This document shows, one piece after another, positions 7,285 to 50,797 of a stretch of DNA of 64,000 nt. Positions within the stretch are counted from its first letter, which is position 1; each line of letters begins with the position of its first letter. Below the pieces are notes generated by a model that did not search any database, was not told where the DNA came from, and worked only from the letters and a program-made list of their open reading frames with translations. The stretch covers positions 62,001-126,000 of IMG/VR virus record IMGVR_UViG_3300025141_000020. One strand, given 5' to 3'. A program made the position numbers and the translations under genes.

Positions 7285-7291
7285 ATAAATA
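7285..7291 (-). promoter_or_regulatory. TATTTAT putative late-promoter element
   Basis: 15 nt upstream of ATG 7269. Confidence 0.55.
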
Positions 7292-7339
7292 GTTATTCTA
7301 CTAAAACTAATAATAAGTTGTGCTTATTTTTAGTAAAGA

Positions 7340-9181
7340 TTATGAGAAAGTTGGTTTCTCTGGTTTTTTGATTCGGATAGCTATATCTTTATTAGGGATT
7401 CTAATTTGTAGTATCTCATTTGGTTGTGCGTAAATAGTGTCGTCAATTAGTTGTATTTCTCTATTTGTCTGTGGTATATAAGGCTGTGTAGATATGGATT
7501 GTGAATACTCCCCACCAACTTTATTAAATACTTTAATATCAACAATATTTATAACACCTGACTGTTCCATAATTAACGCTCTTAAAGAACCTAAGGATAC
7601 ATCAACACCCATTTCAGACCTATCAACATCAAAATAATCACCAACTTTAGTAATAACATTAGTAACTACTTCTCCTTGATTTGTTGATTGTTCTATTATT
7701 AAATCTATGGTAAATCCTATGTCAATAACTTTTGCTGAGCCCACACTAATGTAATCATTTAACATTCTATAATTAGATAAGTAGGTGGCTATATTATTTA
7801 TAAGTGCTTGTGGTACCATAGATGTTAATGCCCCACTTGGTGTGTATGATAATACGTTTAACATCACTTTGTTTTCTATCTCAGTTACTCCAACCTTTGC
7901 TGCTGCACCAAATACTCCTGGCATTGTCCTTACTTTTGATACATAGTCATTTATGGTTACCGCTCTATTTTGAGCTGAAAAATTATATGTTATGTAATTT
8001 CTTATTTCTTCCATAGACATTTGGTCTGCACCACCAATTGCTGCTGTTATATTGGTTACCGATAAACTTTGGTCTACGGATTGATTTATTGCTTGACTTG
8101 GTCCTGCTACCACAAAATCGTAAGTATTTAGTGTGGTTATTGCTCCTGCACCAACATTCGAAGCTTTTCCACCACCAACTCTATATTGTACAAATATGGT
8201 ACTATTAGCTTTAACCATATCACCTAATGCCATATTATTCAAGAATTTAGACATATCTATCTTAACCCCATTTTTACTAAAACTATCTAACAGATTTTGT
8301 GGTGTTTCATTTCCACCCCCAAAAGTTAAATGAAAGAATCCTTCTGGTGTGTATTCTGTTATAAACCTTTGGGTTGCTTTAAGGTATTTACCCACTTTAA
8401 TTCCAACATCATCTTGTGGTGATGATGGGTCAATAACAAACACTTCTTCTTGTGCTAACGCGTCCACTTCATACCATCTGTTAGCGGTATTATCCATAAA
8501 TTCAATATTGGTTGGTAAGCTCTGGTAGCCTGTTCCGTCTTTTTGTATCACAGCTGTAACACCCACTACATTATTTTCTGGTAAAAATAGTTTATAAAAA
8601 GGTTTAGTTAAGACGTCTGTTATTTCTTTTTTGAATACTTTTGTAACCCCGTTTACCGCTAGTACTTTTTTAGTTATAGTATAATTTCTTATAATCCCTG
8701 TAGGGCCTAAGTTAGGTATTTTAGTTCTATTTACAATACCTTCGTTATTGTATTGTGTTGAGAAGTCACAGTCTTCCATTAGTTCGAATATATTCCCACC
8801 ACCTTTAAATTGAGAGCCTCTTCTTAGTAATCCTAGGTATCTAAAGTCTTCTTTGTCCCCCAAGGCTGGAACTATTATCGAGACTTCACAAACAGTCAAA
8901 GATGGTCTATTGCCTGGTATTTTTAACCCATAAGTCCTTGCTAAATTATATAAAGAACTCCTTTCTTGTGCATATTGCAAGACTGTCTCTTGGAAGGTTC
9001 TGTCTATCTGGAAATTTAGGTTGTCGGCTACTGCAGCATTTAAATCTAAAAATACCGAGTACATGGACGCGTCATTTGCGTTTTTAATTAAATCGGGATA
9101 GTATCTGTTAGTTAATCTAACCAGTTCGTTTCTTATCCCTAAGAAATCTCTTTCCGTGTATGCTATTTTTTTATCACTCAT
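7340..9181 (-). CDS. Baseplate wedge subunit (T4 gp6 / baseplate J-like)
   Basis: N-terminal YTERDFLGIRNEL, QERSSLYNLARTYG, YRVGGGKASNVGAG, GGADQMSMEEIR and QNRAVTINDY motifs; next to gp25-like gene. Confidence 0.85.
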   Translation of the reverse strand: MSDKKIAYTERDFLGIRNELVRLTNRYYPDLIKNANDASMYSVFLDLNAAVADNLNFQIDRTFQETVLQYAQERSSLYNLARTYGLKIPGNRPSLTVCEVSIIVPALGDKEDFRYLGLLRRGSQFKGGGNIFELMEDCDFSTQYNNEGIVNRTKIPNLGPTGIIRNYTITKKVLAVNGVTKVFKKEITDVLTKPFYKLFLPENNVVGVTAVIQKDGTGYQSLPTNIEFMDNTANRWYEVDALAQEEVFVIDPSSPQDDVGIKVGKYLKATQRFITEYTPEGFFHLTFGGGNETPQNLLDSFSKNGVKIDMSKFLNNMALGDMVKANSTIFVQYRVGGGKASNVGAGAITTLNTYDFVVAGPSQAINQSVDQSLSVTNITAAIGGADQMSMEEIRNYITYNFSAQNRAVTINDYVSKVRTMPGVFGAAAKVGVTEIENKVMLNVLSYTPSGALTSMVPQALINNIATYLSNYRMLNDYISVGSAKVIDIGFTIDLIIEQSTNQGEVVTNVITKVGDYFDVDRSEMGVDVSLGSLRALIMEQSGVINIVDIKVFNKVGGEYSQSISTQPYIPQTNREIQLIDDTIYAQPNEILQIRIPNKDIAIRIKKPEKPTFS

Positions 9182-9182
9182 A

Positions 9183-9647
9183 TTACAAATTTATAATTAC
9201 AAAATCTCTAGCTTCAAAAACACCACTACCAATACTGTAATCAATACGTACCCGTAAAGTGTATTCATTGACTCCGTGTTTTTTATCAGAAAAACTAAAT
9301 GTCTTTTGGTCTCTCGTTGGGTCTTCTTCTTGAATATCTTCTTCTCTTAGGTCTTCAGCAGATTTAATCTCTACATCGGTAATATTTAAATTAGGTATGA
9401 ATTGTTTTACCGCATCTCTAATTTCTAAATCTATAGAAGTTCTGGTTCCTGTATCCAAAGGTTCAAATATATGTTTCATTAAATTTGTTCCGAATTCGGG
9501 TAAAAAATATCTAGAACCTTTTACTGATAAAACTAAATGAACTAAATTAGACCTTACTTCATCTTCTGGCAATTCGTTCATATGTAAAAATAGCCCTTCT
9601 TGACTATCTTTAAATGGGAATGATATACCGTATTTTGGATTGGGCAT
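9183..9647 (-). CDS. Baseplate wedge subunit, gp25/GPW-like
   Basis: YGISFPF...VRSNLVHLVLSVKGSRYFLPEFGTNL...FEP...AVKQFIP signature. Confidence 0.85.
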   Translation of the reverse strand: MPNPKYGISFPFKDSQEGLFLHMNELPEDEVRSNLVHLVLSVKGSRYFLPEFGTNLMKHIFEPLDTGTRTSIDLEIRDAVKQFIPNLNITDVEIKSAEDLREEDIQEEDPTRDQKTFSFSDKKHGVNEYTLRVRIDYSIGSGVFEARDFVIINL

Positions 9648-9658
9648 TGTTTTTTATA

Positions 9659-9665
9659 ATAAATA
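9659..9665 (-). promoter_or_regulatory. TATTTAT putative late-promoter element
   Basis: 11 nt upstream of ATG 9647. Confidence 0.55.
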
Positions 9666-9691
9666 CTTCTAATCTAGGTTTGTTTTCTAGT

Positions 9692-9886
9692 TTAGTTATG
9701 TTTAACTTCCTTTCCTTCTTCTTTATGTCCACAATGTGGACATATAATTAAATTAGGTACTATTTGTTCACTTTTTGGTACGTTATTAGAAAACAAATGG
9801 TAGTCAGCAATTGACCACCATTTATTACATTTACCACAATTAAAGTGGTATAAAGTTTCTTTACTATATTTGTGTTTCACTGACAC
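9692..9886 (-). CDS. Small zinc-ribbon protein
   Basis: CGKC...CPHC pair in 64 aa; fills the gap after RNR and overlaps its stop. Confidence 0.6.
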   Translation of the reverse strand: MSVKHKYSKETLYHFNCGKCNKWWSIADYHLFSNNVPKSEQIVPNLIICPHCGHKEEGKEVKHN

Positions 9887-11795
9887 CCACCTCTTTAGTT
9901 TCCCCGTTAATATCTGATTTTATTGTTTTTAAATCAACGTCTATTTCACAATTTCCTCCCGAACAAGCTAATTCACCTGATAGGTTTGTGTTGTCATCTA
10001 ATTCAACCACCTTAGTTAAATCCACATCTTTAAGTGATTTCATCATTTCGTAATACTCTTCCTCTGTAATATCTTCAAATGGTGCTTGTATATATGTTCC
10101 TCCGTTATATGGTAATACAGACAAACCATTATAAGATTTTCTATTTTTCCACATCCATTCTCCGGCAGCATCCCATTCATGGTCTCTTAATGATATTGTT
10201 GCTGAAACATTGTGTGAGTTTGAGCCTTTTCTATGTCCTGATTTTACCCATTCTGTTGCAACCTTTTTAACTCTTTCTAAAAGTTGGAAAGGAGATTCGG
10301 TTCTCATAATAGACCCTTTAGGTGCTTTTTGAGGGATACTGATTACGGCGGTGTCATGTGGTCTAAAATATTCATCTTCAACTAATTCAGGATGATTAAT
10401 AATTAAATAACCATAAATTGCCTCATTTTTTCCTACTCTAATTCTTCTAATATAATAATCGTTATGCCATGCATGAATACCTGATGAAGTTCCTAGTGTT
10501 AAAGAAGTGGTTCCTGCAGGTTTAACTGTAGTACATCTTGCTGATTGATTTATATCGATTAGTTTGGATACCCTGGTGTTTTCTCTTTTAACTAAACTGG
10601 CCGCTTTAGCCATATCATAAGTAAGAACTTTACCTGACCCAATTCCTGTCATTGAGACCCCTATTAAGGCATCTTTCTCAGTTGTTTCTTGCCATATTTC
10701 TCTTAAATAATGAAAAGAAGTGTATCCTGCTTGGAGTGTTCCTATAAATGCGGCTGTTTTTACTCTTTCATTTAAATCTTCTTGTGATTCTATATTTGAA
10801 ACATTTACTTCACATAAATTACAAAATTGATTTGGTCTTAAAGCTATTTCACAACAAGGGTTTGTTCCCCAATCTTTATCGTTGTTTAGATAAATACCTG
10901 GCTCTCCTGCTCCTGATAATTCAACTCTTTTCCACAAATCCATAAAAAATTCTTTAGTTATTTTATGTCTCATTAAACATGCTGAATTATTTGCTCTACC
11001 TCTCTGTGAATTTAACTCCCACCAATTACCAGTCTTACAACTAATCATTTCATCGTCATCTGCACTAAATAAACTAATAAGAGCAGCTCTACGAATACCA
11101 CCAGCCAATACTGCATCAGCAATATAGCATATAATATCATGTGTTTCTAATGTTGTTAATTGTTCTCCATTTTCTTTTTGATTTAATAACCCTTCTATCT
11201 TAACTAAACATTCTTTAAGTGGTTGTGGTCCAGGAGCTTTACCACCTGAAGTAATTAGTCTTGCACCTTTTGCTCTAATATCTGTATAATCAAAGTCTAC
11301 TCTAGACCCACCCCCATTCATATATGATTTCATAAGAACTTTAATCGAATCTGCCCAACCTTCAATTGAATCTCCAATTAAAAATCTTCGTTTTCTTTTT
11401 GGGTATGGTTTGCTAATGACGGGTAGTTTTTCTACGTGATGTTTTTGTACTGAGTAACCAACTCCCGTTCCTCCTAGTAATAAAAACATTGTTTCACTAA
11501 AAGCGTCTATGTGGTCTAATGGTACGTAAGCACAGTTATATATTCTATTTGGGCTAATCTCAATTGGTTTTCCTCCGAACTGCATTGACCTCATGGAAGG
11601 TAAAACTTTTTTAGTGTACACTAATTTATATTTTTCTTCTATCTCCTCTTTTAGTTCAGGATATTTTTTAATATGCATATTTTTATTACGTGTTACTAAC
11701 TCTTCCCATGTTTCTCTTCTGTTTAATTGGGGAAGGTACTTAGCGTATTTCATATATACAGTAATGTCCGATAGAATCTTGTTTGATGCTTCCAT
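9864..11795 (-). CDS. nrdJ: Class II (adenosylcobalamin-dependent) ribonucleotide reductase
   Basis: VLPSMRSMQFGG, NCAY, LLLGGTGVGYSV, GGIRRAA, TNPCCEI, FCNLCE, TTVKPAGT and C-terminal ACSGGNC motifs. Confidence 0.92.
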   Translation of the reverse strand: MEASNKILSDITVYMKYAKYLPQLNRRETWEELVTRNKNMHIKKYPELKEEIEEKYKLVYTKKVLPSMRSMQFGGKPIEISPNRIYNCAYVPLDHIDAFSETMFLLLGGTGVGYSVQKHHVEKLPVISKPYPKRKRRFLIGDSIEGWADSIKVLMKSYMNGGGSRVDFDYTDIRAKGARLITSGGKAPGPQPLKECLVKIEGLLNQKENGEQLTTLETHDIICYIADAVLAGGIRRAALISLFSADDDEMISCKTGNWWELNSQRGRANNSACLMRHKITKEFFMDLWKRVELSGAGEPGIYLNNDKDWGTNPCCEIALRPNQFCNLCEVNVSNIESQEDLNERVKTAAFIGTLQAGYTSFHYLREIWQETTEKDALIGVSMTGIGSGKVLTYDMAKAASLVKRENTRVSKLIDINQSARCTTVKPAGTTSLTLGTSSGIHAWHNDYYIRRIRVGKNEAIYGYLIINHPELVEDEYFRPHDTAVISIPQKAPKGSIMRTESPFQLLERVKKVATEWVKSGHRKGSNSHNVSATISLRDHEWDAAGEWMWKNRKSYNGLSVLPYNGGTYIQAPFEDITEEEYYEMMKSLKDVDLTKVVELDDNTNLSGELACSGGNCEIDVDLKTIKSDINGETKEVGVSETQI

Positions 11796-11808: not shown

Positions 11809-13188
11809 TTAGTTATTTTTATTTATTACTTGTTCTCTTCTTTGTAGAGCTCTGGTGACTCTTTCACGATTTCTATTTGTTTTTTCTTCCTCAAAACCTA
11901 GGAATGTCGAAGTTGCGTCCGTATCTATATCTAGGGTGGCATTATCAAATTTACAATTTTCAAAAACTACACCGTCTTTACCTAGTCTAGATTTAACAAT
12001 CGCGATTGTTGCTAGTCCCATTTCTTTTTGTTGTAATGTTTTAGCTACAGATATGATAACATGACCTACTTGAGCTTTCTTAATTGACCCACCCATTTGG
12101 TCTGTTGTTACAACGTCTGAGGATATAGATGACCTATTACCTTGTGTAGCGGTCCATCCAGCTAAATTTAGTTCGTGACACATACCTTCAAATTTTCTCA
12201 TAACAGACCCTTCACCTTTCCACTCATCATTAAAGCTTCTGTCTGGTATAACACAATCAATATAATCTATAAGAACCATATCTAGTTTTACACCTTCAGA
12301 TATTATTTTACGTACTTGGTTTTTTATTTGTAGCATATTTAATTCGTCAGAAGGTAGTTTTTTTAATATCAGTCTACCACCTGTTTTTTTCATTTCATCC
12401 GCTTTATCCAATACAGTGTCTTTATGTTCACCTAAATCTTGTGAAGGAATCCCGGTCCAACAAGTAAAATGTTTTCTTTGGATTATCTTAGGGTTATCTT
12501 CAAAAAATATTTGTAGTACGTTACACCCCATATTATAAGCTGTATTGGCAAATCTGGTCAATAGTGTAGTTTTTCCTACCCCTGTAGGAGCTAAAATAAC
12601 ACCTATCTCACCTTTAGCTAAACCACCATTTAAAATATTATCTATCCCGTCTATACCAGTAGCTAATGGATGTCTATAATCTTCTTCTAATAATGCTTCT
12701 AGTTCACTGAATATTTCAAAATCTTCATTGCTTAATTCACCTGCACTAATAGCATCCCTAATATATTCTTCACACATATCATAACTCTCAAAGTCACCTT
12801 TTTCCATTATACCTTCCACTTTTCTTATAGCTTTTTTAAGTTCTTGTTGTTTACAAAATTTAATAGCTTTTTCTTTTATAAATAAATGGTCCTCAAATGA
12901 AGCGTCTTTAACTTCTTTTAACATATCAAAAACATATTTTTTTGCCATTTCTGAAGATATCTCAATCCTGGTAAGTTGGTCTAAAGCGTCAAATGATGGT
13001 GAGATTTGATAATTTTGGTAATATTCTTTTACCAACTGCATTATTAATTTAAAATACTGATTATCAAAATATTTTGGTAAAATTACGTCTATTATTGACG
13101 TAAAGAAGGTCTTATCCGTTATTATTAAATTTATTAGTTTTAGTTGGAAGCTGTGTCCCAGGTATCCGAAGTTTTTATTCTCATTCAT
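11809..13188 (-). CDS. DnaB/gp41-like replicative helicase
   Basis: Walker A APTGVGKT, LIDYID, ATQGNR and KSRLG motifs. Confidence 0.9.
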   Translation of the reverse strand: MNENKNFGYLGHSFQLKLINLIITDKTFFTSIIDVILPKYFDNQYFKLIMQLVKEYYQNYQISPSFDALDQLTRIEISSEMAKKYVFDMLKEVKDASFEDHLFIKEKAIKFCKQQELKKAIRKVEGIMEKGDFESYDMCEEYIRDAISAGELSNEDFEIFSELEALLEEDYRHPLATGIDGIDNILNGGLAKGEIGVILAPTGVGKTTLLTRFANTAYNMGCNVLQIFFEDNPKIIQRKHFTCWTGIPSQDLGEHKDTVLDKADEMKKTGGRLILKKLPSDELNMLQIKNQVRKIISEGVKLDMVLIDYIDCVIPDRSFNDEWKGEGSVMRKFEGMCHELNLAGWTATQGNRSSISSDVVTTDQMGGSIKKAQVGHVIISVAKTLQQKEMGLATIAIVKSRLGKDGVVFENCKFDNATLDIDTDATSTFLGFEEEKTNRNRERVTRALQRREQVINKNN

Positions 13189-13206: not shown

Positions 13207-13213
13207 ATAAATA
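13207..13213 (-). promoter_or_regulatory. TATTTAT element upstream of helicase
   Basis: Intergenic, 18 nt upstream of ATG 13188. Confidence 0.45.
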
Positions 13214-17030: not shown

Positions 17031-17073
17031 AAATTTTCAATTTTAATGTGTTAATAATATATCTTCTTTGTTA

Positions 17074-17103
17074 AATATAATAACATATTAATTAATAGTC
17101 AAA
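17074..17103 (-). promoter_or_regulatory. Host-type early/middle promoter TTGACT-N17-TATATT
   Basis: Read directly upstream of the SSB-RecA-FKBP-exonuclease operon. Confidence 0.65.
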
Positions 17104-17122: not shown

Positions 17123-17851
17123 TTAGTCTTCGCCGAAGCTTTGTTTGATTTCAGAATCATTATAATTTTCCACTTCTTCTGGTGTTAAAATATACTCTTG
17201 TTTACCCGTTTTGTCAAAAATTTCTTTTTTATCAACGAAAAAATCTGTTAAGGTGTTGTTAAATGGACCACTATCGTATTTTCTTAAGTCCAGCTTTTCT
17301 TTTGCAGTTCTTGGCCTGTACTTTTCTATCTTATCTTCAAGGTCGGAAATTTTATCTACCATGGTGTCCATAGAACTTAAGTGTTGTTCTAGGTCGTTTA
17401 ATTTATCCATTAGGTCCCCTAACCCCTCAGTGTTCTTTGATAGAATATCTTTTTGTGCTGTAAGTTCATCACTTATCTCATCATCTTTACTAACTAAGTC
17501 AGTAACATCTAATTCGGTTGTATTGTCTGTTGGTTCTTCCATGTCCATCAAATCTTCTTCTCCTTGTTCTTCGTCACCAACAACCACTTCTTCCTCTTCT
17601 GCAGGAAGTTCTCCCATCTCAGCTTCAGGGTCTGCAGATATTTCTACTTCATCTGTTGTTTCGTCTTCTACTGGTTCCTCTACATCTTCTTGTTCACCCA
17701 AATTAATATTAAACTTATTAGCCAATCTTTCTACATGACTTCCCATGCCTAAATTTTCCATCCCCATTGATTCATTTAAATTATCAGCGTTGTGTCTTAA
17801 AGTATTAAATCTAATTAATTCTTCTAATATTTTTCTATCCATCTTAGCCAT
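17123..17851 (-). CDS. Highly acidic coiled-coil protein, 242 aa
   Basis: D/E-rich middle region, then heptad LMDKLNDLEQHLSSMDTMVDKISDLEDKI. Confidence 0.7.
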   Translation of the reverse strand: MAKMDRKILEELIRFNTLRHNADNLNESMGMENLGMGSHVERLANKFNINLGEQEDVEEPVEDETTDEVEISADPEAEMGELPAEEEEVVVGDEEQGEEDLMDMEEPTDNTTELDVTDLVSKDDEISDELTAQKDILSKNTEGLGDLMDKLNDLEQHLSSMDTMVDKISDLEDKIEKYRPRTAKEKLDLRKYDSGPFNNTLTDFFVDKKEIFDKTGKQEYILTPEEVENYNDSEIKQSFGED

Positions 17852-18086
17852 TTAATAATTGTTTTACTTTTCCTGAAGGTGATTCAACATTAACCCGTCT
17901 ATTCACTCTGATACTGTTATCAACCCGTTCTATTAAACCATCTCTAGAACGAATGGTATAACATACACCGGTATCTAAGTCACAGACTTCTTTTCCGTCT
18001 TCATTTTGTCCGTGTTCAACTATATTATCCGTCTTTTTACCCATAAAATTTCCTAGTTTTTCTAAAAGTTTGTTGTCTGTAATCAT
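17844..18086 (-). CDS. Hypothetical protein, 80 aa
   Basis: Preceded by TATTTAT; stop overlaps next start. Confidence 0.6.
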   Translation of the reverse strand: MITDNKLLEKLGNFMGKKTDNIVEHGQNEDGKEVCDLDTGVCYTIRSRDGLIERVDNSIRVNRRVNVESPSGKVKQLLNG

Positions 18087-18109: not shown

Positions 18110-18116
18110 ATAAATA
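18110..18116 (-). promoter_or_regulatory. TATTTAT putative late-promoter element
   Basis: Intergenic, 23 nt upstream of ATG 18086. Confidence 0.5.
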
Positions 18117-30677: not shown

Positions 30678-30684
30678 ATAAATA
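30678..30684 (-). promoter_or_regulatory. TATTTAT putative late-promoter element
   Basis: 16 nt upstream of tape measure ATG. Confidence 0.55.
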
Positions 30685-31778: not shown

Positions 31779-32267
31779 TTAGTAAACCAAGATACATCTA
31801 TCTGGTCTTAAGGTAGCTGATATATTGGCTAAACCATCATCGCTATAACTTAAATCGTTAAAGTTAACGTCAGTTAAGAAAGCTCCTTGTAATATCCATT
31901 TTTCTACTACCACCCCTGTTGGGTCTAACAACTCTAAATCTATATTTTTCTTATATCCTGCGGCATAACCCATTCTACCTGTAACTGACTCTGAATGCAT
32001 TCTTACCCACTCCATAAGTGCTTGTGCTGCTGAAGGACCGATAGGGTCTCTAAAGGTTACGTTGATTGTTCCCCAAACAAATCTACCAGCAACATATGTT
32101 GATGTGTTTAGAAAAGGTACCTCTACGGAGTTTATAGTAATTTGTGGTCTAGATGTACTTTCCACATACCATTCATTGATGCCTAAAGAAGAGTCAAATC
32201 TTAGGATAAACCTATTTTTCTTTTTAGGTTCGTAAGGTACGGGCATTTTCATTAACAAGTCAGCCAT
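31779..32267 (-). CDS. Tail tube protein (gp19-like)
   Basis: YEPKKKNRFILRF, RPQITINSVEVPFLN, WGTINVTFRD, YKKNIDLELLDPTG..VEKWILQGAF. Confidence 0.88.
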   Translation of the reverse strand: MADLLMKMPVPYEPKKKNRFILRFDSSLGINEWYVESTSRPQITINSVEVPFLNTSTYVAGRFVWGTINVTFRDPIGPSAAQALMEWVRMHSESVTGRMGYAAGYKKNIDLELLDPTGVVVEKWILQGAFLTDVNFNDLSYSDDGLANISATLRPDRCILVY

Positions 32268-32326
32268 TGTATTTTATTTTTTTTTAATTGTTATTTTTTT
32301 ACTAATAGGAATAAAATCCTTTTATT

Positions 32327-32333
32327 ATAAATA
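32327..32333 (-). promoter_or_regulatory. TATTTAT putative late-promoter element
   Basis: Intergenic, about 60 nt upstream of tube ATG. Confidence 0.55.
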
Positions 32334-33224: not shown

Positions 33225-33231
33225 ATAAATA
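33225..33231 (-). promoter_or_regulatory. TATTTAT putative late-promoter element
   Basis: 5 nt upstream of ATG 33219. Confidence 0.5.
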
Positions 33232-34490: not shown

Positions 34491-34497
34491 ATAAATA
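34491..34497 (-). promoter_or_regulatory. TATTTAT putative late-promoter element
   Basis: 14 nt upstream of ATG 34476. Confidence 0.55.
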
Positions 34498-34546
34498 TAC
34501 TTTAAATACGAATGGGGACATTTCCCCACTCATATTATTAATTATT

Positions 34547-37984: not shown

Positions 37985-37991
37985 ATAAATA
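37985..37991 (-). promoter_or_regulatory. TATTTAT putative late-promoter element (second copy 38028-38034)
   Basis: 42 nt upstream of sheath ATG. Confidence 0.55.
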
Positions 37992-39341: not shown

Positions 39342-39857
39342 TTATATTCCGTCAAATTCATTCTCACTAACAAATGAACATTTTATTGTTCTGTAGAAAG
39401 CTTTATACCCACCTATTGTGTGCACATTATCAGATGTAACCCTACCATCATCTGTGACGACATAATATCTCATTCTTTCTTCTGTTTCATTATACCCAAT
39501 ATAATCTCCATAATTTATATCTATGTCTAATTCCTCTAAATGTTTCATGTACACGCTAAAAGTTAAATTCCCTGGTTCCATTTGATTTACAAGTCCCGAA
39601 GCATAACTTTTATTTTGTGCTTCTGATATATCAACATAACCTTTAATTTCCACCGGAGCTTTATATCTAATTTCCTCTTTGCCAGCTTCACCATAAACAT
39701 CGTCAACATCACTAAGTTTTTTATCCACTCTAAATAAAACCAAAGTAAAATGCATGTCGCCATGCAACCACTCCATTCCAATATTTTGTTCTAAAGCAAA
39801 ATCTTCTGAACCAAAAAATTTAGATATTCTTGTTATAGGTACTTTTTTATTACTCAT
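39342..39857 (-). CDS. Head closure / neck protein (gp14-like)
   Basis: YKAPVEIKGYV, GNLTFSVY, INYGDYIGY...YYVV pattern; next to tail terminator. Confidence 0.6.
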   Translation of the reverse strand: MSNKKVPITRISKFFGSEDFALEQNIGMEWLHGDMHFTLVLFRVDKKLSDVDDVYGEAGKEEIRYKAPVEIKGYVDISEAQNKSYASGLVNQMEPGNLTFSVYMKHLEELDIDINYGDYIGYNETEERMRYYVVTDDGRVTSDNVHTIGGYKAFYRTIKCSFVSENEFDGI

Positions 39858-39875: not shown

Positions 39876-39882
39876 ATAAATA
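39876..39882 (-). promoter_or_regulatory. TATTTAT putative late-promoter element
   Basis: 18 nt upstream of ATG 39857. Confidence 0.55.
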
Positions 39883-39886: not shown

Positions 39887-39915
39887 TTGACTTCCTTTTC
39901 TCTTTTTATTATATT
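39887..39915 (+). promoter_or_regulatory. Host-type promoter TTGACT-N17-TATATT
   Basis: Ends 7 nt before SNF2 ATG. Confidence 0.65.
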
Positions 39916-39922
39916 TTAGATT

Positions 39923-41673: not shown

Positions 41674-41680
41674 TATTTAT
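41674..41680 (+). promoter_or_regulatory. TATTTAT putative late-promoter element
   Basis: 16 nt upstream of ATG 41697. Confidence 0.55.
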
Positions 41681-41696: not shown

Positions 41697-42311
41697 ATGG
41701 GCAAAAAAGAACTAACAAAAAAACAACTTAAAAAAAGTCTTAAAAATATAACCGAGGGTTCTGTTCAAATGAAGGGCCATTTAAAAACGGCATATAACGC
41801 AATAAAAAAGTTAGATAAAATATCGGTAGGCCAAAAAATTAAAAATAATAAAGGTGATAATGTAACTGTAACACCAAAAGATAATGATAAAATTCTTGCA
41901 GCAATGAGAAAAGTAGAGGATATATATAGAGATATTATTGGTGGTGAGATAAAAGATAAGGAGGATAAGGATGAAAAAGAAAAAGCTACAGAGGTAACAG
42001 CTAAAAATGAAAAATCTGAAGGTCACGGAAAAATGCCGAGTGAGGTTGTTGGTGAAAATACCGTTAAACTATCGCAAAAGAAATTAAATTCTATCATAAA
42101 AAGAGTAATTATAGAAAGAAAGAAACAACTTAATGAGCAAGCAGAAAAAGCGTCCCCAGTATCGAGATTGATATACGATGCACAACAAATGGCTAAATGG
42201 GCAGATGAGGCTGGTGGAGCAGTATCATTTGATGAGTCGTTATTACAAGATGGTGAATTTAATAAACTTGTGGTGAGGATTAAAGATGCAATTAATGATG
42301 TTAAACTATAA
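41697..42311 (+). CDS. Hypothetical Lys/Glu-rich protein, 204 aa
   Basis: ORF flanked by its own TATTTAT element and terminator. Confidence 0.65.
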   Translation: MGKKELTKKQLKKSLKNITEGSVQMKGHLKTAYNAIKKLDKISVGQKIKNNKGDNVTVTPKDNDKILAAMRKVEDIYRDIIGGEIKDKEDKDEKEKATEVTAKNEKSEGHGKMPSEVVGENTVKLSQKKLNSIIKRVIIERKKQLNEQAEKASPVSRLIYDAQQMAKWADEAGGAVSFDESLLQDGEFNKLVVRIKDAINDVKL

Positions 42312-42339: not shown

Positions 42340-42365
42340 AAAGGTCCTAAATAAGGGCCTTTTTT
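42340..42365 (+). terminator. Intrinsic terminator
   Basis: AAAGGTCCT-AAATA-AGGGCCTTT followed by T-run. Confidence 0.7.
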
Positions 42366-42381: not shown

Positions 42382-42388
42382 TATTTAT
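42382..42388 (+). promoter_or_regulatory. TATTTAT putative late-promoter element
   Basis: After a terminator, 16 nt upstream of ATG 42405. Confidence 0.6.
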
Positions 42389-42404: not shown

Positions 42405-43529
42405 ATGCCAGTAACAATTGACCCAATAAAAAGAGAAAAATTATTTACTCAAGTAAAGCATTTATTAGGTGCTCCCTTAAGAGGGGTTGAGCTTGAGGAT
42501 GAAATGTTAGATACGGCTATAGAATTAGCTGTTCTTGATTATGGCCAATATGTTCAGGATTGGTTGATAGAAAACCAATGGTCTGCTCTATATGGTCAAG
42601 ACCTAGATGTTATTTCTTTAACTAACGCTTTTTTAACTAGGGACTTAAGTTTTGAAACGTCCTTTACTTATGCCTATTCCAAGATAGTGGGGTTACAAGC
42701 TGGTGGAGGTTATGAGTTAAAACGAGACTTTGTAGATTTAGTTACAAACCAACAAATATATACAATACCAGCTGGAAGAGAAATAAATGAGGTTTTATGG
42801 TACACAAGAGCTGAACTAAATGAAGCCTTTATAGACCCATTTTTAGGTGGTTTCGGTGGTCTAGGTGGTAACTTGGGTATGGGTGGTGCTCAAATGGGAA
42901 TGCAAGGTTCTTACTTTATGATGCCAGCTTTTGACATATTACTAAGAATGCAGGATAGAAATTTAAAAAATAGGATGATTGGTGGTGACATGACTTATCG
43001 GATTACTGCTGGAGCTGGTGGTATTCATGGAGAAAAATTCTTACACCTTTACAATGTTCCTGGTGGAAGATTTGATTTTGGTAATATTATGACCAACCAA
43101 CACAGAGTTTGGTATTGGTATTATGATTCCGGCCCTGAGACTAGGAACGAATGTTTGTTAGCTAATAAAGATATTGTTCTTTTACCCAGTGATGTGACAT
43201 TAGATGAAATGTCTTATGGTGACCTTAATGCCCCAGCACAATCGTGGGTTAGAAAATACTTTTTTGCTAAAGCTAAGGAGATGTTGGGTCGTGTTCGTGG
43301 TAAATTTTCCGGAGCTTTAAAGACCCCGGGAGCTGAATTAACTCTTGAGTATGATGCTTTATTGTCAGAGTCAAAAGATGAGGTAGCTAAACTAGTAGAA
43401 GAACTTACCCTAAGACTAGAGAGATTAAGAAATGATAAAATGTTAGAAAGAAAAGCTCTTGAAGCTGAAAACTTAAATAAGTCACTTGGGTTTAGACCAA
43501 TGAACCCAGGAACAATATTCACAATATAA
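42405..43529 (+). CDS. Neck / head-tail connector protein (gp13-like)
   Basis: LLGAPLRGVELEDEML..AIELA, WVRKYFFAKAKEMLGRVRGKF..PG..LTL...L.SE motifs. Confidence 0.75.
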   Translation: MPVTIDPIKREKLFTQVKHLLGAPLRGVELEDEMLDTAIELAVLDYGQYVQDWLIENQWSALYGQDLDVISLTNAFLTRDLSFETSFTYAYSKIVGLQAGGGYELKRDFVDLVTNQQIYTIPAGREINEVLWYTRAELNEAFIDPFLGGFGGLGGNLGMGGAQMGMQGSYFMMPAFDILLRMQDRNLKNRMIGGDMTYRITAGAGGIHGEKFLHLYNVPGGRFDFGNIMTNQHRVWYWYYDSGPETRNECLLANKDIVLLPSDVTLDEMSYGDLNAPAQSWVRKYFFAKAKEMLGRVRGKFSGALKTPGAELTLEYDALLSESKDEVAKLVEELTLRLERLRNDKMLERKALEAENLNKSLGFRPMNPGTIFTI

Positions 43530-47330: not shown

Positions 47331-47711
47331 TTAACAAGGAGATTTTACAAATGAGTCGGAAACAGTTATAAATAGGTCTTCTCTTATTGGGACTATCAAT
47401 TCTGTATTATCTGAATGAAAATATATTATAAATTGCCCTTCGTATCTACCTACTTTATTGACATTGTTTTTAGTCCATTTATAATATATGTAATATTCAG
47501 TAGGGGCGTTTGGTGTTGTTGGTACTTTAGATACTATATAAGCCTGTTTATTGGCAACCTTCAGTATGCCGGTATCAACACTTTTCATTGAGAAGTATAT
47601 TGTGGAATTAGCTAACTTATTATGAAAGTTATTAAAGTCATTTCTTCCGTCTAATACTAATTGCATCTTTAGTATCGGGTCTGTTGAGTCTTTTCTTATA
47701 AAAAATTCCAT
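47331..47711 (-). CDS. BppU/DUF2479-like adaptor protein
   Basis: FFIRKDSTDPILKMQL...YYKW...GRYEGQFIIYF...LIVP pattern. Confidence 0.55.
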   Translation of the reverse strand: MEFFIRKDSTDPILKMQLVLDGRNDFNNFHNKLANSTIYFSMKSVDTGILKVANKQAYIVSKVPTTPNAPTEYYIYYKWTKNNVNKVGRYEGQFIIYFHSDNTELIVPIREDLFITVSDSFVKSPC

Positions 47712-47727: not shown

Positions 47728-47734
47728 ATAAATA
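47728..47734 (-). promoter_or_regulatory. TATTTAT putative late-promoter element
   Basis: 16 nt upstream of ATG 47711. Confidence 0.55.
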
Positions 47735-47740: not shown

Positions 47741-50700
47741 TTAACAAGAACTGTCACATGCGTTTGGACAACACGATAACCAAGCTGGGTTTGTATCTGG
47801 TGCACCATATTGTGCGAAGTCAGAACATTGGAAATACCCACCAACATTCATTGTACCACATAAGTAACAACAACCATTATAGATTACGTTATCATTTTCT
47901 TGGTAGTTTATGAACGCGCTGTTGTACTCACCTCCTGACCAACCATATGAACTAGTGTTTAGTTGAGCTGGGTTTATCAGGCCGTTTATGTTGTTAGTTG
48001 CACATACATCACAACTACTTAAACAACAACTATAATCTGTACCCCCCCAAATGTTAGAACAGTCTGATGTTGCTATTGGGTTATATCCAAAAGAACTGGC
48101 GTCTGTACATCCTGATATGGATGTAAGTGGTGTGTAGGTACAACAACTATAATTTGTACCACCAATAGTACTAATACAATCGCAAGTCGCTTCATTATTA
48201 TAATTAAGTGCCGTTATATCCGTACATCCAGAAATACATACACCTGCTCCACCATATTCACAACAGTGTGTACTACTTCCACCCCCAACACCCCAACAAT
48301 CACATGTTGCGGCACCATTATAGTTAGATGCTGTTACATCCATACAACCAGGTACACAAGGTGGGTCAAAAATACAACAACTAATATCATAACCACCATT
48401 GTTATAGTTTACACCATTACAATCACAATATGGGTCAATATTAGCGTTACCACCCACACCATAATTAACAGCGGTATAAGCCATACAACCACTAGGACAA
48501 ATGGTGTCACATCCTGGACCCAAATACTCAGTACATAAACAACAATTTTCAAAAGCTGTACCCACTGAAAGTTCATCCCATTCACCAACCCAAGCAAAGT
48601 CACCTGAATTATTCCATGGTAATGTTCCTCCTGGACTATTTGAATAGTATCCCCCACTACTTGACGTCATATTTACAATATTAGTAGACGTTGTTGCGGT
48701 TAACCCCAAATAAGTAAAACACGCCCAACTACCATATAGGTCTGGGTCAGAAATTTTAGTTAGATAAGCCCCACCTAAACTAGTCCCTACTGTTGGTTGT
48801 CCTACTGAGTCCCAGAATAAGTTACTGTTATTAGTGTTACAAGGCTCAAACTCATTGTACCCTGGTAAAGTATCGTCAAGAAATACAATTTCGGTGACAC
48901 CTGAAAATATTTGCTCTAATGTTCCTCCAGAGTTTTGGCCTTCAGTCTCATTCCACTGCACAGAGCTACAGTAACTCCACATATGTAAATAACAGTTTTG
49001 TGGTTCTGGTGGTGGTTCTCCTGTTGGTACTGGTAATTCACAATCTCGACAACCTCCTGGACAATTCTTACATTCCTCACAATCAATTAGCGAATACCTT
49101 TCTTTATTTATTAAAAAATTATGATATACCTCATCAGCTGTTAGAGGTTTAATATAATACATCATTTGTGATATTCCCCCTATAAATGAACCAGCAAAGA
49201 ATTGTGATATTAGGTCGTTATCCTGTAGTACTGGTTTTTTGTTCTCTCTATATCCCCACGCTCCACCACCCCAAGACATATTATACGACACGCCAAATTG
49301 GCTTTCTGGTGTTTGATTTGTATGCCTAGGTATTATTTCTTCGTAGTCATTAACTGTGTGTACAATTCTACCATTTACATAGAATTTAAGTGTACCCATT
49401 CTCAAGTCTTTATCTGTAAACCAATGATATATGGTATTTGCGGAACAATATAGATTAAGTTTTCCTGGAATAAAGGTGTCACATATATTATTAGCGGAAT
49501 AAGGGTAGGTTCCAGTTATTAAGTCGTTAATACCACCCTTATTTAATAAATCACAATCTTCTAAATATATATTTCGGTCAAATACAACATCTACTTGTAT
49601 CCACGTATCAGCACAATTACCACTTAGTTCTGTAATAAAGGGGCAAATTGGTTCGGAATAAGATTCTTCTAACCCCCAACCGCAAGTCCATTGGGAGTTG
49701 GGGTTACATTCCCCACTCGTATCAATACAATCACCAGTATACCTTAGAGTCCTATAACCAATCCTCATATCGTCAGTTATTCTAAACCCTAAAACATTAC
49801 TATAGACATCTGTGGTTTGACCTTCTCTCAATCCTTTAAAAAAGAAAAATCCTGAATTATTTGTTACACCAGTGATTATACTACTTGAGTTCTTCCAGCT
49901 ATAATTCGTTAAGTTGTGAGGCATGGTGTCGCTCATACTATTAGGTGGGGTGTTACTGCATAATGTTGTTGAGCTTATCCCATTATATCCACTAGCGTTA
50001 TAACAGTTCTGTAATTGGTATCCTATGGTATTCAGTTTTAAATAACTGCTAAATGACCATCCTTTATTTGGTCTGGTAGGTAATACCTCATAATCATATC
50101 CGTGTAGTTTATAGAATCCTTGGTAAAACCCTCCTTTTAACTCTTGGTAATATCCTGAACTATCGTAAGCATTCATTATTGACGTGTCGGTAAAATAAGA
50201 GATTCCTGTTAATGGTAGGCCATATCCTTTAACCTGACTCATTTTAAACCTTTTATCAAAATGTAATTTGTTAAATGTGGATGCTATAGGTATTTGTTTG
50301 TAAATCTCTACACAATCAGATGGGGGGAGAAGTTGCACATTGGCTATATTAATATCATTATATAGTCCATTACTTCTAGCTGTCTCTGCTATTATTAAAT
50401 CACATTTTTTATCCACAGTTATACCACTACAATCACATACTGTTTTTGCACTTAACCAGGTAAATTTACTTAATATTGTAAAAGGTTCTGATGTTTGTGG
50501 TGATGCTGAAAGTACTGGATATTGGGTGAAACATGTTGTTATTGGTTGAGATGAACTGTCTGAGTCATTTAAGTCTATTAGTACTGGTAATACTGTAGTA
50601 TCACCTAACCCTATGATGTTGTTTGACCAAACCACTTCTGTATTAAAATCCTTTTCATCGGACACTAAAAAGAAGTCATAGTAGGAGCTATAGTTTAATT

Positions 50701-50749
50701 TAGCGTCAATCCTATTAAAATTATAATTGTTTAAATTTTGTGTTCCCAT
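47741..50749 (-). CDS. Large Cys-rich virion/adhesin-like protein, 1002 aa (LamG-like N-terminal half, Cys repeats, CBM-like end)
   Basis: WIQVDVVF...LKFYVNG...FIGGISQMMYYIKPLTADEV (LamG-like); PPPEP linker; four GCxD..NYN repeats. Confidence 0.6.
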   Translation of the reverse strand: MGTQNLNNYNFNRIDAKLNYSSYYDFFLVSDEKDFNTEVVWSNNIIGLGDTTVLPVLIDLNDSDSSSQPITTCFTQYPVLSASPQTSEPFTILSKFTWLSAKTVCDCSGITVDKKCDLIIAETARSNGLYNDINIANVQLLPPSDCVEIYKQIPIASTFNKLHFDKRFKMSQVKGYGLPLTGISYFTDTSIMNAYDSSGYYQELKGGFYQGFYKLHGYDYEVLPTRPNKGWSFSSYLKLNTIGYQLQNCYNASGYNGISSTTLCSNTPPNSMSDTMPHNLTNYSWKNSSSIITGVTNNSGFFFFKGLREGQTTDVYSNVLGFRITDDMRIGYRTLRYTGDCIDTSGECNPNSQWTCGWGLEESYSEPICPFITELSGNCADTWIQVDVVFDRNIYLEDCDLLNKGGINDLITGTYPYSANNICDTFIPGKLNLYCSANTIYHWFTDKDLRMGTLKFYVNGRIVHTVNDYEEIIPRHTNQTPESQFGVSYNMSWGGGAWGYRENKKPVLQDNDLISQFFAGSFIGGISQMMYYIKPLTADEVYHNFLINKERYSLIDCEECKNCPGGCRDCELPVPTGEPPPEPQNCYLHMWSYCSSVQWNETEGQNSGGTLEQIFSGVTEIVFLDDTLPGYNEFEPCNTNNSNLFWDSVGQPTVGTSLGGAYLTKISDPDLYGSWACFTYLGLTATTSTNIVNMTSSSGGYYSNSPGGTLPWNNSGDFAWVGEWDELSVGTAFENCCLCTEYLGPGCDTICPSGCMAYTAVNYGVGGNANIDPYCDCNGVNYNNGGYDISCCIFDPPCVPGCMDVTASNYNGAATCDCWGVGGGSSTHCCEYGGAGVCISGCTDITALNYNNEATCDCISTIGGTNYSCCTYTPLTSISGCTDASSFGYNPIATSDCSNIWGGTDYSCCLSSCDVCATNNINGLINPAQLNTSSYGWSGGEYNSAFINYQENDNVIYNGCCYLCGTMNVGGYFQCSDFAQYGAPDTNPAWLSCCPNACDSSC
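48013..48493 (-). repeat. Four 39-47-codon Cys-rich protein repeats (xGCxDxxAxNYNxxATCDC...GG...CC)
   Basis: GC codons start near 48490, 48349, 48229 and 48112. Confidence 0.8.
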
Positions 50750-50754
50750 TATTA

Positions 50755-50797
50755 ATAAATATAAATGTAATACTATTTAATTCTTATCGATATTTAT
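50755..50797. promoter_or_regulatory. Divergent pair of TATTTAT elements (50755-50761 minus; 50791-50797 plus)
   Basis: Each is in sense orientation, 5 and 12 nt from its ATG. Confidence 0.55.

What the first reader, a model, noticed from the sequence alone, without database searches (positions are those of the whole stretch)
7285..50797. TATTTAT element upstream of 15 genes: a candidate late promoter that is the reverse complement of the T4 late box
Sense-strand TATTTAT (often TATTTATA) lies 5-60 nt before starts at 7285, 9659, 13207, 18110, 30678, 32327, 33225, 34491, 37985, 39876, 47728 and 50755 (minus) and 41674, 42382 and 50791 (plus). Most of these genes are structural or hypothetical; the helicase is the main exception. 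The T4 gp55 promoter is TATAAATA, and at co-directional junctions (7285, 30678, 34491, 42382) only the inverted reading points into a gene. No -35 partner is evident. This suggests a distinct phage sigma factor or RNA polymerase specificity.
Basis: partly seen in the sequence, partly recalled or inferred. Interest (0 to 1): 0.7.

Follow-up and report, generated by a model that had tools for sequence, protein, structure and literature searches.

The report
Phage late-gene promoter box TATTTAT
A seven-letter DNA signal, TATTTAT, sits just ahead of the particle-building genes of this uncultured marine giant phage and its relatives; it is most likely the switch that turns those genes on late in infection, probably read by a phage-made sigma factor that is a distant cousin of phage T4's gp55.

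Summary
All 15 sites exist. TATTTAT is not enriched in the window overall, but it is strongly concentrated on the sense strand just upstream of genes: in co-directional spacers TATTTATA occurs 29 times against 3.4 expected from AT-matched shuffles, while the T4 spelling TATAAATA occurs 2 times against 4.4. No one-mismatch variant is enriched and no -35 partner exists. The box heads sheath, tube, baseplate, neck, portal, terminase and protease genes, but not DNA polymerase, RNR, SSB or UvsX. It is invariant in about 60 relatives although flanks and leader lengths diverge. It recurs in a cultured Microcystis phage whose host belongs to another phylum. Two metatranscriptome contigs end 10 nt downstream of the tail-tube box.

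Best reading: this is a T4-style late promoter with a single tight TATA-like box. "Reverse complement" is a coincidence of a near-palindrome. In the same orientation the box differs from TATAAATA only at -10/-9. The likely reader is a 233-aa phage sigma outside the window whose σ2 domain is closest to gp55. Open points: no gp45-type clamp was found, a second RpoD-like phage sigma exists, and no true 5'-end or timing data are available. This is a new variant of a known kind and is testable in the cultured phage.

The parts
7285..7291 (-). TATTTAT box 15 nt before the 1172-aa ORF 3751-7269 (no PHROG hit); co-directional junction
9659..9665 (-). box 11 nt before the baseplate-wedge gene 9183-9647; the gp6-like wedge gene 7340-9181 follows in the same operon
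13207..13213 (-). box 18 nt before the DnaB-like replicative helicase 11809-13188 (the one replication gene with a box); RNR 9864-11795 follows
18110..18116 (-). box 23 nt before the 80-aa ORF 17844-18086
30678..30684 (-). box 16 nt before the 728-aa ORF 28475-30661, which heads a run of large ORFs (953, 362, 105 and 2019 aa) without boxes of their own
32327..32333 (-). box 59 nt before the tail-tube gene 31779-32267. The heptamer is invariant in about 60 distinct relatives while flanks and leader length (28-75 nt) diverge. Two ~97%-identical metatranscriptome contigs end at 32317, 10 nt downstream of the heptamer
33225..33231 (-). box exactly 5 nt before the ATG of the 286-aa ORF 32359-33219. 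The arrangement TATTTAT-N5-ATG is kept in 23 of 28 distinct relatives down to about 54% protein identity; candidate leaderless mRNA
34491..34497 (-). box 14 nt before the 275-aa ORF 33649-34476; preceded by a short GC hairpin (about 34514-34527) after the sheath stop; relatives' RNA contigs carry TATTTATA at this junction
   Evidence: (table 5c)
37985..37991 (-). box 42 nt before the tail-sheath gene 34547-37942 (31-43 nt in relatives)
39876..39882 (-). box 18 nt before the 171-aa ORF 39342-39857, in a 65-nt divergent spacer that also holds a host-type promoter candidate for the + strand
41674..41680 (+). box 16 nt before the 204-aa ORF 41697-42311
42382..42388 (+). box 16 nt before the neck/head-tail adaptor-like gene 42405-43529; preceded by a terminator-like hairpin plus T-run (about 42342-42365)
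47728..47734 (-). box 16 nt before the 126-aa ORF 47331-47711
50755..50761 (-). box 5 nt before the ATG of the 1002-aa ORF 47741-50749 (leaderless-class spacing); one of a back-to-back pair in a 60-nt divergent spacer
50791..50797 (+). box 12 nt before the 298-aa ORF 50810-51706; partner of the divergent pair
52112..52118 (+). sense heptamer inside ORF 51699-52154, 42 nt before ORF 52161-52502; weaker flanks; possible internal promoter or chance
58959..58965 (+). sense heptamer inside ORF 58156-59016, 40 nt before the methyltransferase-like ORF 59006-59743; weaker flanks; possible internal promoter or chance

Best explanation
TATTTAT, usually (A)TATTTATA followed by an A-rich stretch, is the core and apparently only sequence-specific element of the late promoters of this phage lineage. 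The architecture is that of T4 late promoters: one tightly conserved A/T 'TATA-like' box where a -10 element would lie, an A/T-rich melting segment downstream, no -35 element, about 55 copies per genome on either strand, each pointing into virion, packaging or unknown genes. Host RNA polymerase core is inferred to be redirected to these boxes by a phage-encoded sigma-like protein of 233 aa. That protein lies outside the window at genome 137007-137708(+), which would be window position 75007-75708. Its N-terminal sigma-2 domain is structurally closest to T4 gp55. Transcription would start about 12-16 nt from the first T of the box. This gives either very short leaders, typically about 0-10 nt, which fits a host that does not use Shine-Dalgarno sequences (probably Bacteroidota), or leaderless mRNAs where the ATG sits exactly 5 nt after the heptamer. 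Read in the same orientation, the box differs from T4's TATAAATA only at -10 and -9 (AA to TT). SHOWN: location, orientation, tightness, gene-class association, conservation across relatives, recurrence in a phage of another host phylum, presence and sigma fold of the protein. INFERRED: that it is a promoter, the start-site position, late timing, and which protein reads it.
For: Statistics: (sense-only, intergenic, exact-match-only enrichment against AT-matched shuffles). Architecture: no information upstream of -2 and A-rich downstream. This matches the T4 late-promoter description in PMC2988020 (8-bp box, AT-rich downstream segment, no -35, about 50 sites, both polarities). Gene class: boxes directly precede sheath, tube, baseplate wedge, neck, portal, large terminase and prohead protease. 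DNA polymerase, RNR, SSB, UvsX, exonuclease, SF2 helicase and dUTPase lack one (Fisher p = 0.025 on 18 annotated genes). Conservation: the heptamer is invariant before the tube gene in about 60 distinct relatives with diverged flanks. Clade-wide, sense TATTTATA occurs 192 times against about 23 expected, and TATAAATA 35 against about 25, in 406 spacers. Spacing: exact N5 for one gene in 23/28 relatives but 13-75 nt for three others, which is the pattern of leaderless plus leadered transcripts from one promoter type. RNA: in two metatranscriptomes, contigs about 97% identical to the tube gene both end at 32317, 10 nt past the heptamer, and none at >=90% identity crosses the box. Phage-encoded determinant: the cultured Microcystis phage Mel-JY01 (cyanobacterial host, Shine-Dalgarno-type leaders of about 34 nt) has sense ATATTTAT 10 times against 1.1 +/- 1.0 expected, antisense 0. 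It encodes a clear member of the same sigma-like family (hhalign probability 99.3%, E 4e-20). Its complete genome lacks any canonical Sigma70_r2 gene. Sigma-like protein: phrog_234 'late sigma transcription factor' E 8e-4 (18 of 74 family members, best 7.5e-6); Sigma70_r2 in 28 of 74 (best 5e-7). The profile's only PDB sequence hits are sigmas, including gp55. The AlphaFold model has pLDDT 93. Foldseek's top 50 are almost all sigmas. VIA-align's top hit is T4 gp55 7d7c_F, Z 10.7, residues 9-132. hhalign to gp55 gives E 1.5e-4. gp55 pocket residues Y97, R57, L54 and F86 are matched by Y92, R53, I50 and F81, whereas the -9-pocket residues H95 and N13 fall on Y90 and P13 (with PMC7892883). No phage RNAP beta-like gene.
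Against: There is no direct 5'-end mapping and no time course. The RNA evidence is two assembled contigs from environmental samples, which could end at a processing site or an assembly break. The link between the box and the 233-aa protein is correlative. Its similarity to gp55 is weak at sequence level (hhalign probability 51%; Pfam below the gathering score), and helical folds give inflated Z-scores. The protein has an extra C-terminal helical domain that gp55 lacks, which may be sigma-3/4-like. No gp45-type sliding clamp was detected (phrog_223, PF02916) in this contig or in 93-99% complete relatives, and no gp33 was recognised. The T4 activation mechanism may therefore not apply. The phage also encodes a full RpoD-like sigma that could take part. 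The helicase gene carries a box. The contig end (position 16 from the first T) and the leaderless spacing (position 12) differ by 4 nt.
Confidence: 0.7

Rival explanations
1. The box is a promoter, but it is read by something other than the gp55-like protein: the host's own primary or alternative sigma (possibly with a phage appropriator), or the phage's second, RpoD-like sigma (266 aa, genome 26029-26829(-)). In that reading the embedded TATAAT acts as a -10 element with an upstream 'TATT' extension.
For: A canonical sigma with regions 1.2-4 is encoded and conserved in relatives. 10 of 37 spacer boxes continue as TATTTATAAT, which embeds a perfect TATAAT. With that register the start would fall about 16-17 nt from the first T, exactly where the two RNA contigs end. 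Extended -10 promoters need no -35 (own knowledge).
Against: Only the heptamer is conserved. The three following bases complete TATAAT in a minority of boxes, with information content of 0.15-0.23 bits. The same heptamer is used by Mel-JY01, whose complete genome has no canonical sigma gene and whose host is a cyanobacterium rather than a probable Bacteroidota, so neither the RpoD-like phage sigma nor one particular host sigma explains it. The box does not match the Bacteroidota -7 consensus TAnnTTTG, which appears separately before SSB and helicase genes. The N5-ATG class would start inside the ORF under this register.
Confidence: 0.15
2. The box is an RNA-level signal, such as an endonuclease processing site, a stability element or an A/U-rich translation enhancer, rather than a promoter.
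For: It is A/U-rich and lies close to start codons (mostly 5-19 nt) in a genome without Shine-Dalgarno sequences. The RNA contig ends could be cleavage products.
Against: Distance to the ATG is not fixed: 5-85 nt here, and 28-75 nt for the tube gene among relatives. In Mel-JY01 the box sits about 34 nt upstream of genes that have their own GGAG-type sites. The tube RNA contigs end downstream of the box, so the box is not in the mature mRNA. Boxes occur at divergent junctions, one per direction (50755/50791), as promoters do. Exact-match-only conservation of 7 bases is unusual for an S1-type enhancer.
Confidence: 0.07
3. The literal 'inverted T4 box' reading: a T4-type TATAAATA on the opposite strand drives transcription away from the adjacent gene (antisense or upstream-directed RNAs), or is recognised on the template strand.
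For: TATTTATA is the exact reverse complement of TATAAATA. Template-strand promoter reading exists in phage AR9's non-virion RNAP (own knowledge).
Against: Orientation always follows the downstream gene on both strands. At co-directional junctions the opposite reading would fire into the 3' end of the preceding gene. The asymmetric flanks (A-rich on the gene side, nothing on the other) fit melting towards the gene. Exact spacing to an ATG in one class and RNA ends on the gene side also fit. No phage RNAP was found.
Confidence: 0.03

Closest known systems
Bacteriophage T4 late promoters and the gp55/gp33/gp45 late-transcription system
   Same: A single, tightly conserved 8-bp A/T box in the -10 position, an A/T-rich segment downstream, no -35, roughly 50 copies per genome on both strands, ahead of virion genes. 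A small phage sigma whose sigma-2 domain is the best structural match. Six of eight box positions are identical in the same orientation, including A(-12) and A(-8), which gp55 flips out (PMC2988020, PMC7892883).
   Different: The consensus is TATTTATA, not TATAAATA (positions -10 and -9). The T4 spelling is at or below chance here. The sigma is 233 aa with an extra C-terminal helical domain and is only marginally similar in sequence. No gp45-type clamp or gp33 was recognised. Leaders are extremely short or absent. The host is probably Bacteroidota.
Late promoters of other T4-related phages (KVP40, 44RR, S-PM2, Aeh1; cyanophage NATAAATA)
   Same: In-silico-defined late boxes that co-vary with gp55 homologues. 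Small departures from TATAAATA are known, for example a/gC at -13/-12 in Aeh1 (PMC2988020).
   Different: Known variants change the 5' edge of the box. Here the centre of the box is changed, and the sigma lies far outside the recognised gp55 family.
Bacteroidota primary-sigma promoters (-33 TTG / -7 TAnnTTTG; own knowledge)
   Same: An A/T-rich element close to the start site and short leaders without Shine-Dalgarno sequences. Candidates of this type exist in the same genome before SSB and SF2-helicase genes.
   Different: TATTTAT does not fit TAnnTTTG, there is no -33 TTG, and the box is shared with a cyanophage.
Extended -10 sigma-70 promoters
   Same: They function without a -35. A TATAAT is embedded in about a quarter of the boxes.
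   Different: The conserved part is TATTTAT, not TGnTATAAT, and the bases that would complete TATAAT are weakly conserved.
'Moraphages', aquatic jumbo phages up to 307 kb with predicted Bacteroidota hosts (PMC12619734)
   Same: Genome size (relatives reach about 297 kb), habitat, T4-like structural core, a sigma factor among the core genes, no RNAP. This is probably the lineage of this contig.
   Different: Membership was not verified by sequence. That paper contains no promoter analysis.

Membership tests
T4-type (gp55-dependent) late promoter | Single conserved A/T-rich octamer in the -10 region with no conserved -35 element | tested here: met
   Information content is about 0 from -50 to -3 relative to the box. 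No enriched upstream word with flexible spacing.
T4-type (gp55-dependent) late promoter | Consensus sequence TATAAATA | tested here: not met
   Sense TATAAATA 2 against 4.4 expected; TATTTATA 29 against 3.4 in co-directional spacers. Clade-wide 35 against 192.
T4-type (gp55-dependent) late promoter | Consensus tightly adhered to; tens of copies per genome, either polarity, before late (virion) genes | tested here: met
   57 sense-upstream copies in 210 kb on both strands. No one-mismatch variant is enriched. Sheath, tube, wedge, neck, portal, TerL and protease carry it.
T4-type (gp55-dependent) late promoter | Transcription start about 6 nt downstream of the octamer | tested here: inconclusive
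   The conserved N5-ATG class implies a start about 4-5 nt after the octamer. Two RNA contigs end 9 nt after it. No true 5'-end data.
T4-type (gp55-dependent) late promoter | Late timing, dependent on DNA replication | not testable with these tools
   The phage is uncultured. Only steady-state environmental metatranscriptome contigs are available.
T4 late-transcription machinery | gp55 homologue (sigma-2-like specificity factor) | tested here: inconclusive
   233-aa ORF: phrog_234 E 8e-4; hhalign to gp55 E 1.5e-4 with probability 51%; VIA-align top hit gp55, Z 10.7. BLASTP is insignificant, and there is an extra C-terminal domain.
T4 late-transcription machinery | gp45 sliding clamp as activator | tested here: inconclusive
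   phrog_223 and PF02916 find nothing in this contig or in the 93% and 99% complete relatives. Neither search had a true positive control, and a small AAA+ with clamp-loader similarity exists, so a divergent clamp is possible.
T4 late-transcription machinery | gp33 co-activator | tested here: inconclusive
   The conserved 127-aa ORF directly after the sigma gene has no PHROG or PDB match. It folds as one long helix with pTM 0.29. Its Mel-JY01 counterpart is syntenic but only marginally similar (E 0.003). T4 gp33 itself was not compared.
Sigma-70 family (for the 233-aa protein) | Sigma region 2 fold and sequence signature | tested here: met
   Sigma-2 domains of RpoS, SigA, SigW and SigK superpose at 2.3-3.0 A over 82-96 residues. 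28 of 74 family members hit Sigma70_r2 (best 5e-7). This protein alone scores 16.8 bits, below the 24-bit cutoff.
Sigma-70 family (for the 233-aa protein) | Region 4 helix-turn-helix that reads a -35 element | tested here: inconclusive
   Whole-chain alignments to sigma-70, sigma-S and sigma-E run to residue 233 but at about 12 A rmsd. No Sigma70_r4 hit in 74 members. No -35 element in the promoters.
Bacteroidota primary-sigma promoter | -7 element TAnnTTTG with -33 TTG | tested here: not met
   TATTTAT(A) mismatches TAnnTTTG at two fixed positions. There is no upstream TTG conservation. Candidates of that type occur elsewhere in the genome.

The most novel reading that the evidence does not exclude
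A large, previously unrecognised family of phage sigma factors combines a gp55-like sigma-2 domain with an extra C-terminal domain. It has about 1200 representative clusters, in abundant marine jumbo phages and in Microcystis phages. It directs late transcription from a -10-only box whose specificity has shifted at the centre (TATTTATA). It does so without a T4-type sliding-clamp activator and across hosts of different phyla, and it produces leaderless late mRNAs in hosts that do not use Shine-Dalgarno sequences. More distant members, such as the 484-kb phage LR756508.1, have moved to another box, ACTTAAA.
Probability: 0.35. Interest if true: 0.65.

Novelty: new variant of a known kind. Interest (0 to 1): 0.5.

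Why it matters
It gives a concrete, testable regulatory code for an abundant and almost unstudied group of ocean jumbo phages. One exact heptamer marks late transcription units, which helps to annotate the many unknown genes as late or virion genes and to read metatranscriptomes by infection stage. It would extend the T4 late-promoter paradigm to a sigma far outside the recognised gp55 family, with a shift at the positions that gp55 reads through its -9 pocket. That offers a natural experiment in how sigma-2 domains change -10 specificity. The same box and sigma family occur in the cultured Microcystis phage Mel-JY01, so the hypothesis can be tested at the bench. It also raises the question of whether clamp-coupled activation is dispensable in this lineage.

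Tried and rejected
(1) Whole-window enrichment: none. The signal is positional only. (2) Direct T4 gp55 protein search in the contig: nothing; BLASTP of the candidate against gp55 is insignificant. (3) phrog_12791 (another late-sigma family): no hit. (4) gp45 clamp by phrog_223 and PF02916 in the own contig and in near-complete relatives: nothing. (5) -35 partner search with fixed and flexible spacing: only generic A/T words and a faint T-run at about -21 to -15, partly from upstream terminators. (6) An RNA run holding this exact phage: none. Only relatives in marine metatranscriptomes, kept as contigs. Most of the depth over the tube leader came from 31-mer scraps of the A-rich leader and was ignored. 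(7) gp33-likeness of the 127-aa ORF after the sigma gene: no PHROG or PDB sequence hit, and the model is a single long helix with pTM 0.29, so no fold search was run. (8) Literature: no paper in the library links TATTTAT(A) to a phage late promoter. No paper on Mel-JY01 was found. The Ma-LMM01 transcriptome paper reports only sigma-70-like motifs (PMC5780444). (9) LR756508.1 as a third test of box and sigma co-occurrence: the box is absent and a different word is enriched. (10) Reading the box as an extended -10 around TATAAT: rejected as the main reading because the completing bases are weakly conserved; kept as a rival. (11) T7-type RNAP search (PF00940): no hit, but the control set was silent, so it is uninformative.


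Full report
CONTEXT. The window is bases 62001-126000 of a 210,568-bp IMG/VR viral contig (GC 33.6%, CheckV about 66% complete). The tail sheath, tube, baseplate wedge, neck, portal, terminase and prohead protease are T4-like. Relatives are very abundant in Tara and JGI marine data and reach about 297 kb. Shine-Dalgarno words before starts are at background level (7 of 199 genes), and A is enriched at -3 and at -11 to -14. Several box-less upstream regions carry TTG(AC)-N~19-TAnnTTT(G). From my own knowledge these are Bacteroidota signatures. They agree with the 'moraphage' description: aquatic jumbo phages up to 307 kb, predicted Bacteroidota hosts, a core sigma factor, no RNAP, and no promoter analysis (PMC12619734). 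Membership of that group was not verified by sequence.

1. THE OBSERVATION.
- The window as a whole is not enriched: 42 copies against 54.5 +/- 6.6.
- The signal is positional. Genome-wide, 60 of 168 copies lie in the 4.3% of DNA that is intergenic.
- TATTTAT is the top 7-mer in the 60 nt before starts: 50 genes against 4.3 expected.
Sense TATTTAT: 37 against 7.0 +/- 2.5 (max 14 of 300). TATTTATA: 29 against 3.4. Antisense ATAAATA: 5 against 12. TATAAATA: 2 against 4.4.
- The heptamer is all-or-none. None of its 21 one-mismatch variants is sense-biased.
- Aligned sites show 'not T' at -1, A at +8, and an A-rich run followed by purines downstream. Nothing is conserved upstream from -50 to -3, and no -35-like word appears with flexible spacing.
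- Flank scores separate the 57 upstream boxes from the 111 other heptamers (p about 1e-22).

2. WHICH GENES.
- In the window the box directly precedes baseplate wedge (9183-9647), tail tube, tail sheath, a neck/adaptor-like gene, several large unknown ORFs, and the DnaB-like helicase.
- Outside the window it precedes portal, large terminase and prohead protease.
- DNA polymerase, RNR, SSB-like, UvsX-like, exonuclease, SF2 helicase, dUTPase and the glycosyl/methyltransferase block lack it.
- On 18 annotated genes the association with virion and packaging functions gives Fisher p = 0.025.
- SSB and the SF2 helicase instead carry host-type candidates, at window 17073-17102(-) and 39887-39916(+).

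3. CONSERVATION.
- Before the tail-tube gene the heptamer is invariant in about 60 distinct relatives (85-100% tube identity). The flanks are unalignable and the distance to the ATG varies from 28 to 75 nt.
- Over 406 co-directional spacers in 80 related loci, sense TATTTATA occurs 192 times (about 23 expected) and TATAAATA 35 times (about 25). TATTTATA wins in 69 loci and loses in 2.
- Spacing is bimodal by gene. The 286-aa gene keeps TATTTAT-N5-ATG in 23 of 28 distinct relatives down to about 54% protein identity. The sheath (31-43 nt), the 275-aa gene (13-65 nt) and the tube (28-75 nt) drift.
- A fixed-distance translational element cannot explain that pattern. One promoter type serving leaderless and leadered mRNAs can. 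It puts the start about 12-13 nt from the first T, which is 4-6 nt after the octamer, as in T4 (TATAAATA at -13 to -6; PMC2988020, PMC7892883).

4. RNA.
- No public RNA run holds this exact phage.
- In marine metatranscriptomes, contigs about 97% identical to the tube gene from two runs (387 nt and 263 nt) both end at window 32317, 10 nt downstream of the heptamer. No contig of >=90% identity crosses the box.
- Contigs of more distant relatives that bridge the sheath/275-aa junction carry TATTTATA in the unaligned insert (table 5c).
- This is suggestive only, because contigs are not 5' ends. It is consistent with a start just downstream of the box and with the box being absent from the mRNA.

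5. WHO READS IT.
- No RNAP beta-like domain is present here or in two near-complete relatives, with all 14 positive controls ringing.
- Candidate A is a 233-aa ORF at genome 137007-137708(+), outside the window. It hits the gp55 PHROG (E 8e-4) and Sigma70_r2 (E 6e-3, below cutoff).
- Its family is large: 1187 representatives at E <= 1e-3. Of 74 diverse members, 28 hit Sigma70_r2 and 18 hit the gp55 PHROG, and nothing else recurs. The profile's only PDB sequence hits are sigmas, including gp55.
- The AlphaFold model (pLDDT 93) retrieves almost only sigma factors. VIA-align ranks T4 gp55 first (Z 10.7, residues 9-132) and fits isolated sigma-2 domains at 2.3-3.0 A. Whole-chain alignments to sigma-70, sigma-S and sigma-E extend to the C-terminus, so there is an additional C-terminal domain that gp55 lacks.
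- hhalign to gp55 gives E 1.5e-4 but only 51% probability. In that alignment the gp55 pocket residues Y97 (stacks on A-12), R57, L54 and F86 fall on Y92, R53, I50 and F81. H95 and N13, which form the A(-9) pocket, fall on Y90 and P13 (PMC7892883).
- Read in the T4 register the box is T A T T T A T A at -13 to -6. A(-12) and A(-8) are retained and only -10 and -9 change. The residue pattern is therefore what a shifted -9 specificity would predict, but the alignment is too weak to lean on.
- Candidate B is a second, canonical sigma (266 aa, genome 26029-26829(-); Sigma70_r2 63.7 bits; SigA/RpoD/RpoS regions 1.2-4, E about 1e-42), conserved in relatives.

6. A DISCRIMINATING COMPARISON.
- The cultured Microcystis phage Mel-JY01 (sheath about 32% identical) has the same box in its structural module. 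Sense ATATTTAT occurs 10 times against 1.1 +/- 1.0 expected (max 5 of 300), antisense 0, about 34 nt before genes that have GGAG-type ribosome sites.
- It encodes a clear member of candidate A's family (hhalign 99.3%, E 4e-20), followed by a syntenic ~130-aa ORF.
- Its complete genome has no canonical Sigma70_r2 gene.
- So the box follows the phage lineage and candidate A across two host phyla, and it does not need candidate B.
- The 484-kb phage LR756508.1 has a homologue of candidate A that is only about 23% identical. It lacks the box and shows another enriched word, ACTTAAA, 8 times against 0.7 expected. This suggests that specificity diversifies within the family.

7. WHAT IS MISSING FOR 'T4-LIKE'.
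- No gp45-type clamp was found, although a small AAA+ resembling a clamp loader exists.
- The 127-aa ORF after the sigma gene could not be classified.
- Timing is unknown.
- I therefore describe the box as working like a T4 late promoter, and I do not file the system as a member of the gp55/gp33/gp45 machinery.

8. VERDICT.
It is a late, sigma-type promoter. The 'reverse complement' reflects the near-palindromic T4 box, and the simpler description is a two-base central variant in the same orientation.
- No paper in the searchable library describes this box.
- Novelty: a new variant of a known kind.
- Confidence is about 0.85 that it is a late-class promoter core, and about 0.6-0.65 that the gp55-like protein reads it.

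Caveats: gene starts come from crude longest-ORF calling. Related loci are not phylogenetically independent. The RNA evidence is contig-level.

Noticed in passing
genome 26029-26829 (-), outside the window (L106:1072-1872:-): A second, canonical phage sigma factor (266 aa; Sigma70_r2 63.7 bits; SigA/RpoD/RpoS regions 1.2-4, E about 1e-42). It is conserved in near-complete relatives and is preceded by a TTG...TAnnTTTG-type sequence about 87 nt upstream. Its target promoters are unknown; it may serve a middle class.
   Followed up: partly
window 17073-17102 (-) and 39887-39916 (+); also genome 168802, 171314, 182047: A second promoter-like class, TTG(AC)-N15-21-TAnnTTT(G), lies before SSB-like, SF2-helicase and other non-structural genes. 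It resembles Bacteroidota primary-sigma promoters (own knowledge). Statistics are modest: 9 of 46 genome-wide matches are sense-upstream.
   Followed up: partly
whole contig (199 gene starts): Essentially no Shine-Dalgarno usage (7 of 199 genes, equal to the random rate), with A-enrichment at -3 and at -11 to -14. This points to a Bacteroidota-like host translation style.
   Followed up: partly
window 33225-33231/ATG 33219, 50755-50761/ATG 50749; 8 sites genome-wide with 5-nt spacing: A class of genes whose ATG lies exactly 5 nt after the heptamer, with spacing conserved in relatives. These are candidate leaderless late mRNAs.
   Followed up: partly
L097 (LR756508.1, 183090-226212): This 484-kb uncultured phage has a distant homologue of the gp55-like sigma but no TATTTAT box. 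ACTTAAA(G) is the top upstream word (8 genes against 0.7 expected) and may be its own late box.
   Followed up: no
genome 137726-138109 (+), outside the window (L002:2133-2516): A conserved 127-aa ORF lies immediately after the gp55-like sigma gene, with its own box 4 nt before the ATG. Mel-JY01 has a syntenic 131-aa ORF (26% identity, E 0.003). It is predicted as one long helix. It might be a co-factor but is unclassified.
   Followed up: partly
window 18142-24201 (-): A 2019-aa ORF whose last ~30 residues hit an endolysin PHROG (E 5e-5). It sits in a run of very large ORFs (728, 953, 362 and 2019 aa) downstream of the box at 30678. These are probably tail, baseplate or fibre proteins.
   Followed up: no
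window 53594-61429 (+): A block of glycosyltransferase- and methyltransferase-like genes plus a dUTPase/dCTP-deaminase-like gene, without late boxes in its spacers. It is possibly a DNA-modification or surface-glycan module.
   Followed up: no
genome 164993-167035 (+), outside the window: An FtsH-like ATP-dependent protease (phrog_4871, E 9e-234) preceded by a 243-nt box-less spacer.
   Followed up: no
window ~34514-34527 (-) and ~42342-42365 (+): Short GC hairpins, the second followed by a T-run, lie directly upstream of two boxes. They are terminator-like elements separating successive late units.
   Followed up: no
genome 133639-134052 (+), outside the window: A 257-aa frame with clamp-loader-like AAA+ similarity (phrog_168, E 6e-7), although no gp45-type clamp is detectable. 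The clamp system may be divergent.
   Followed up: no
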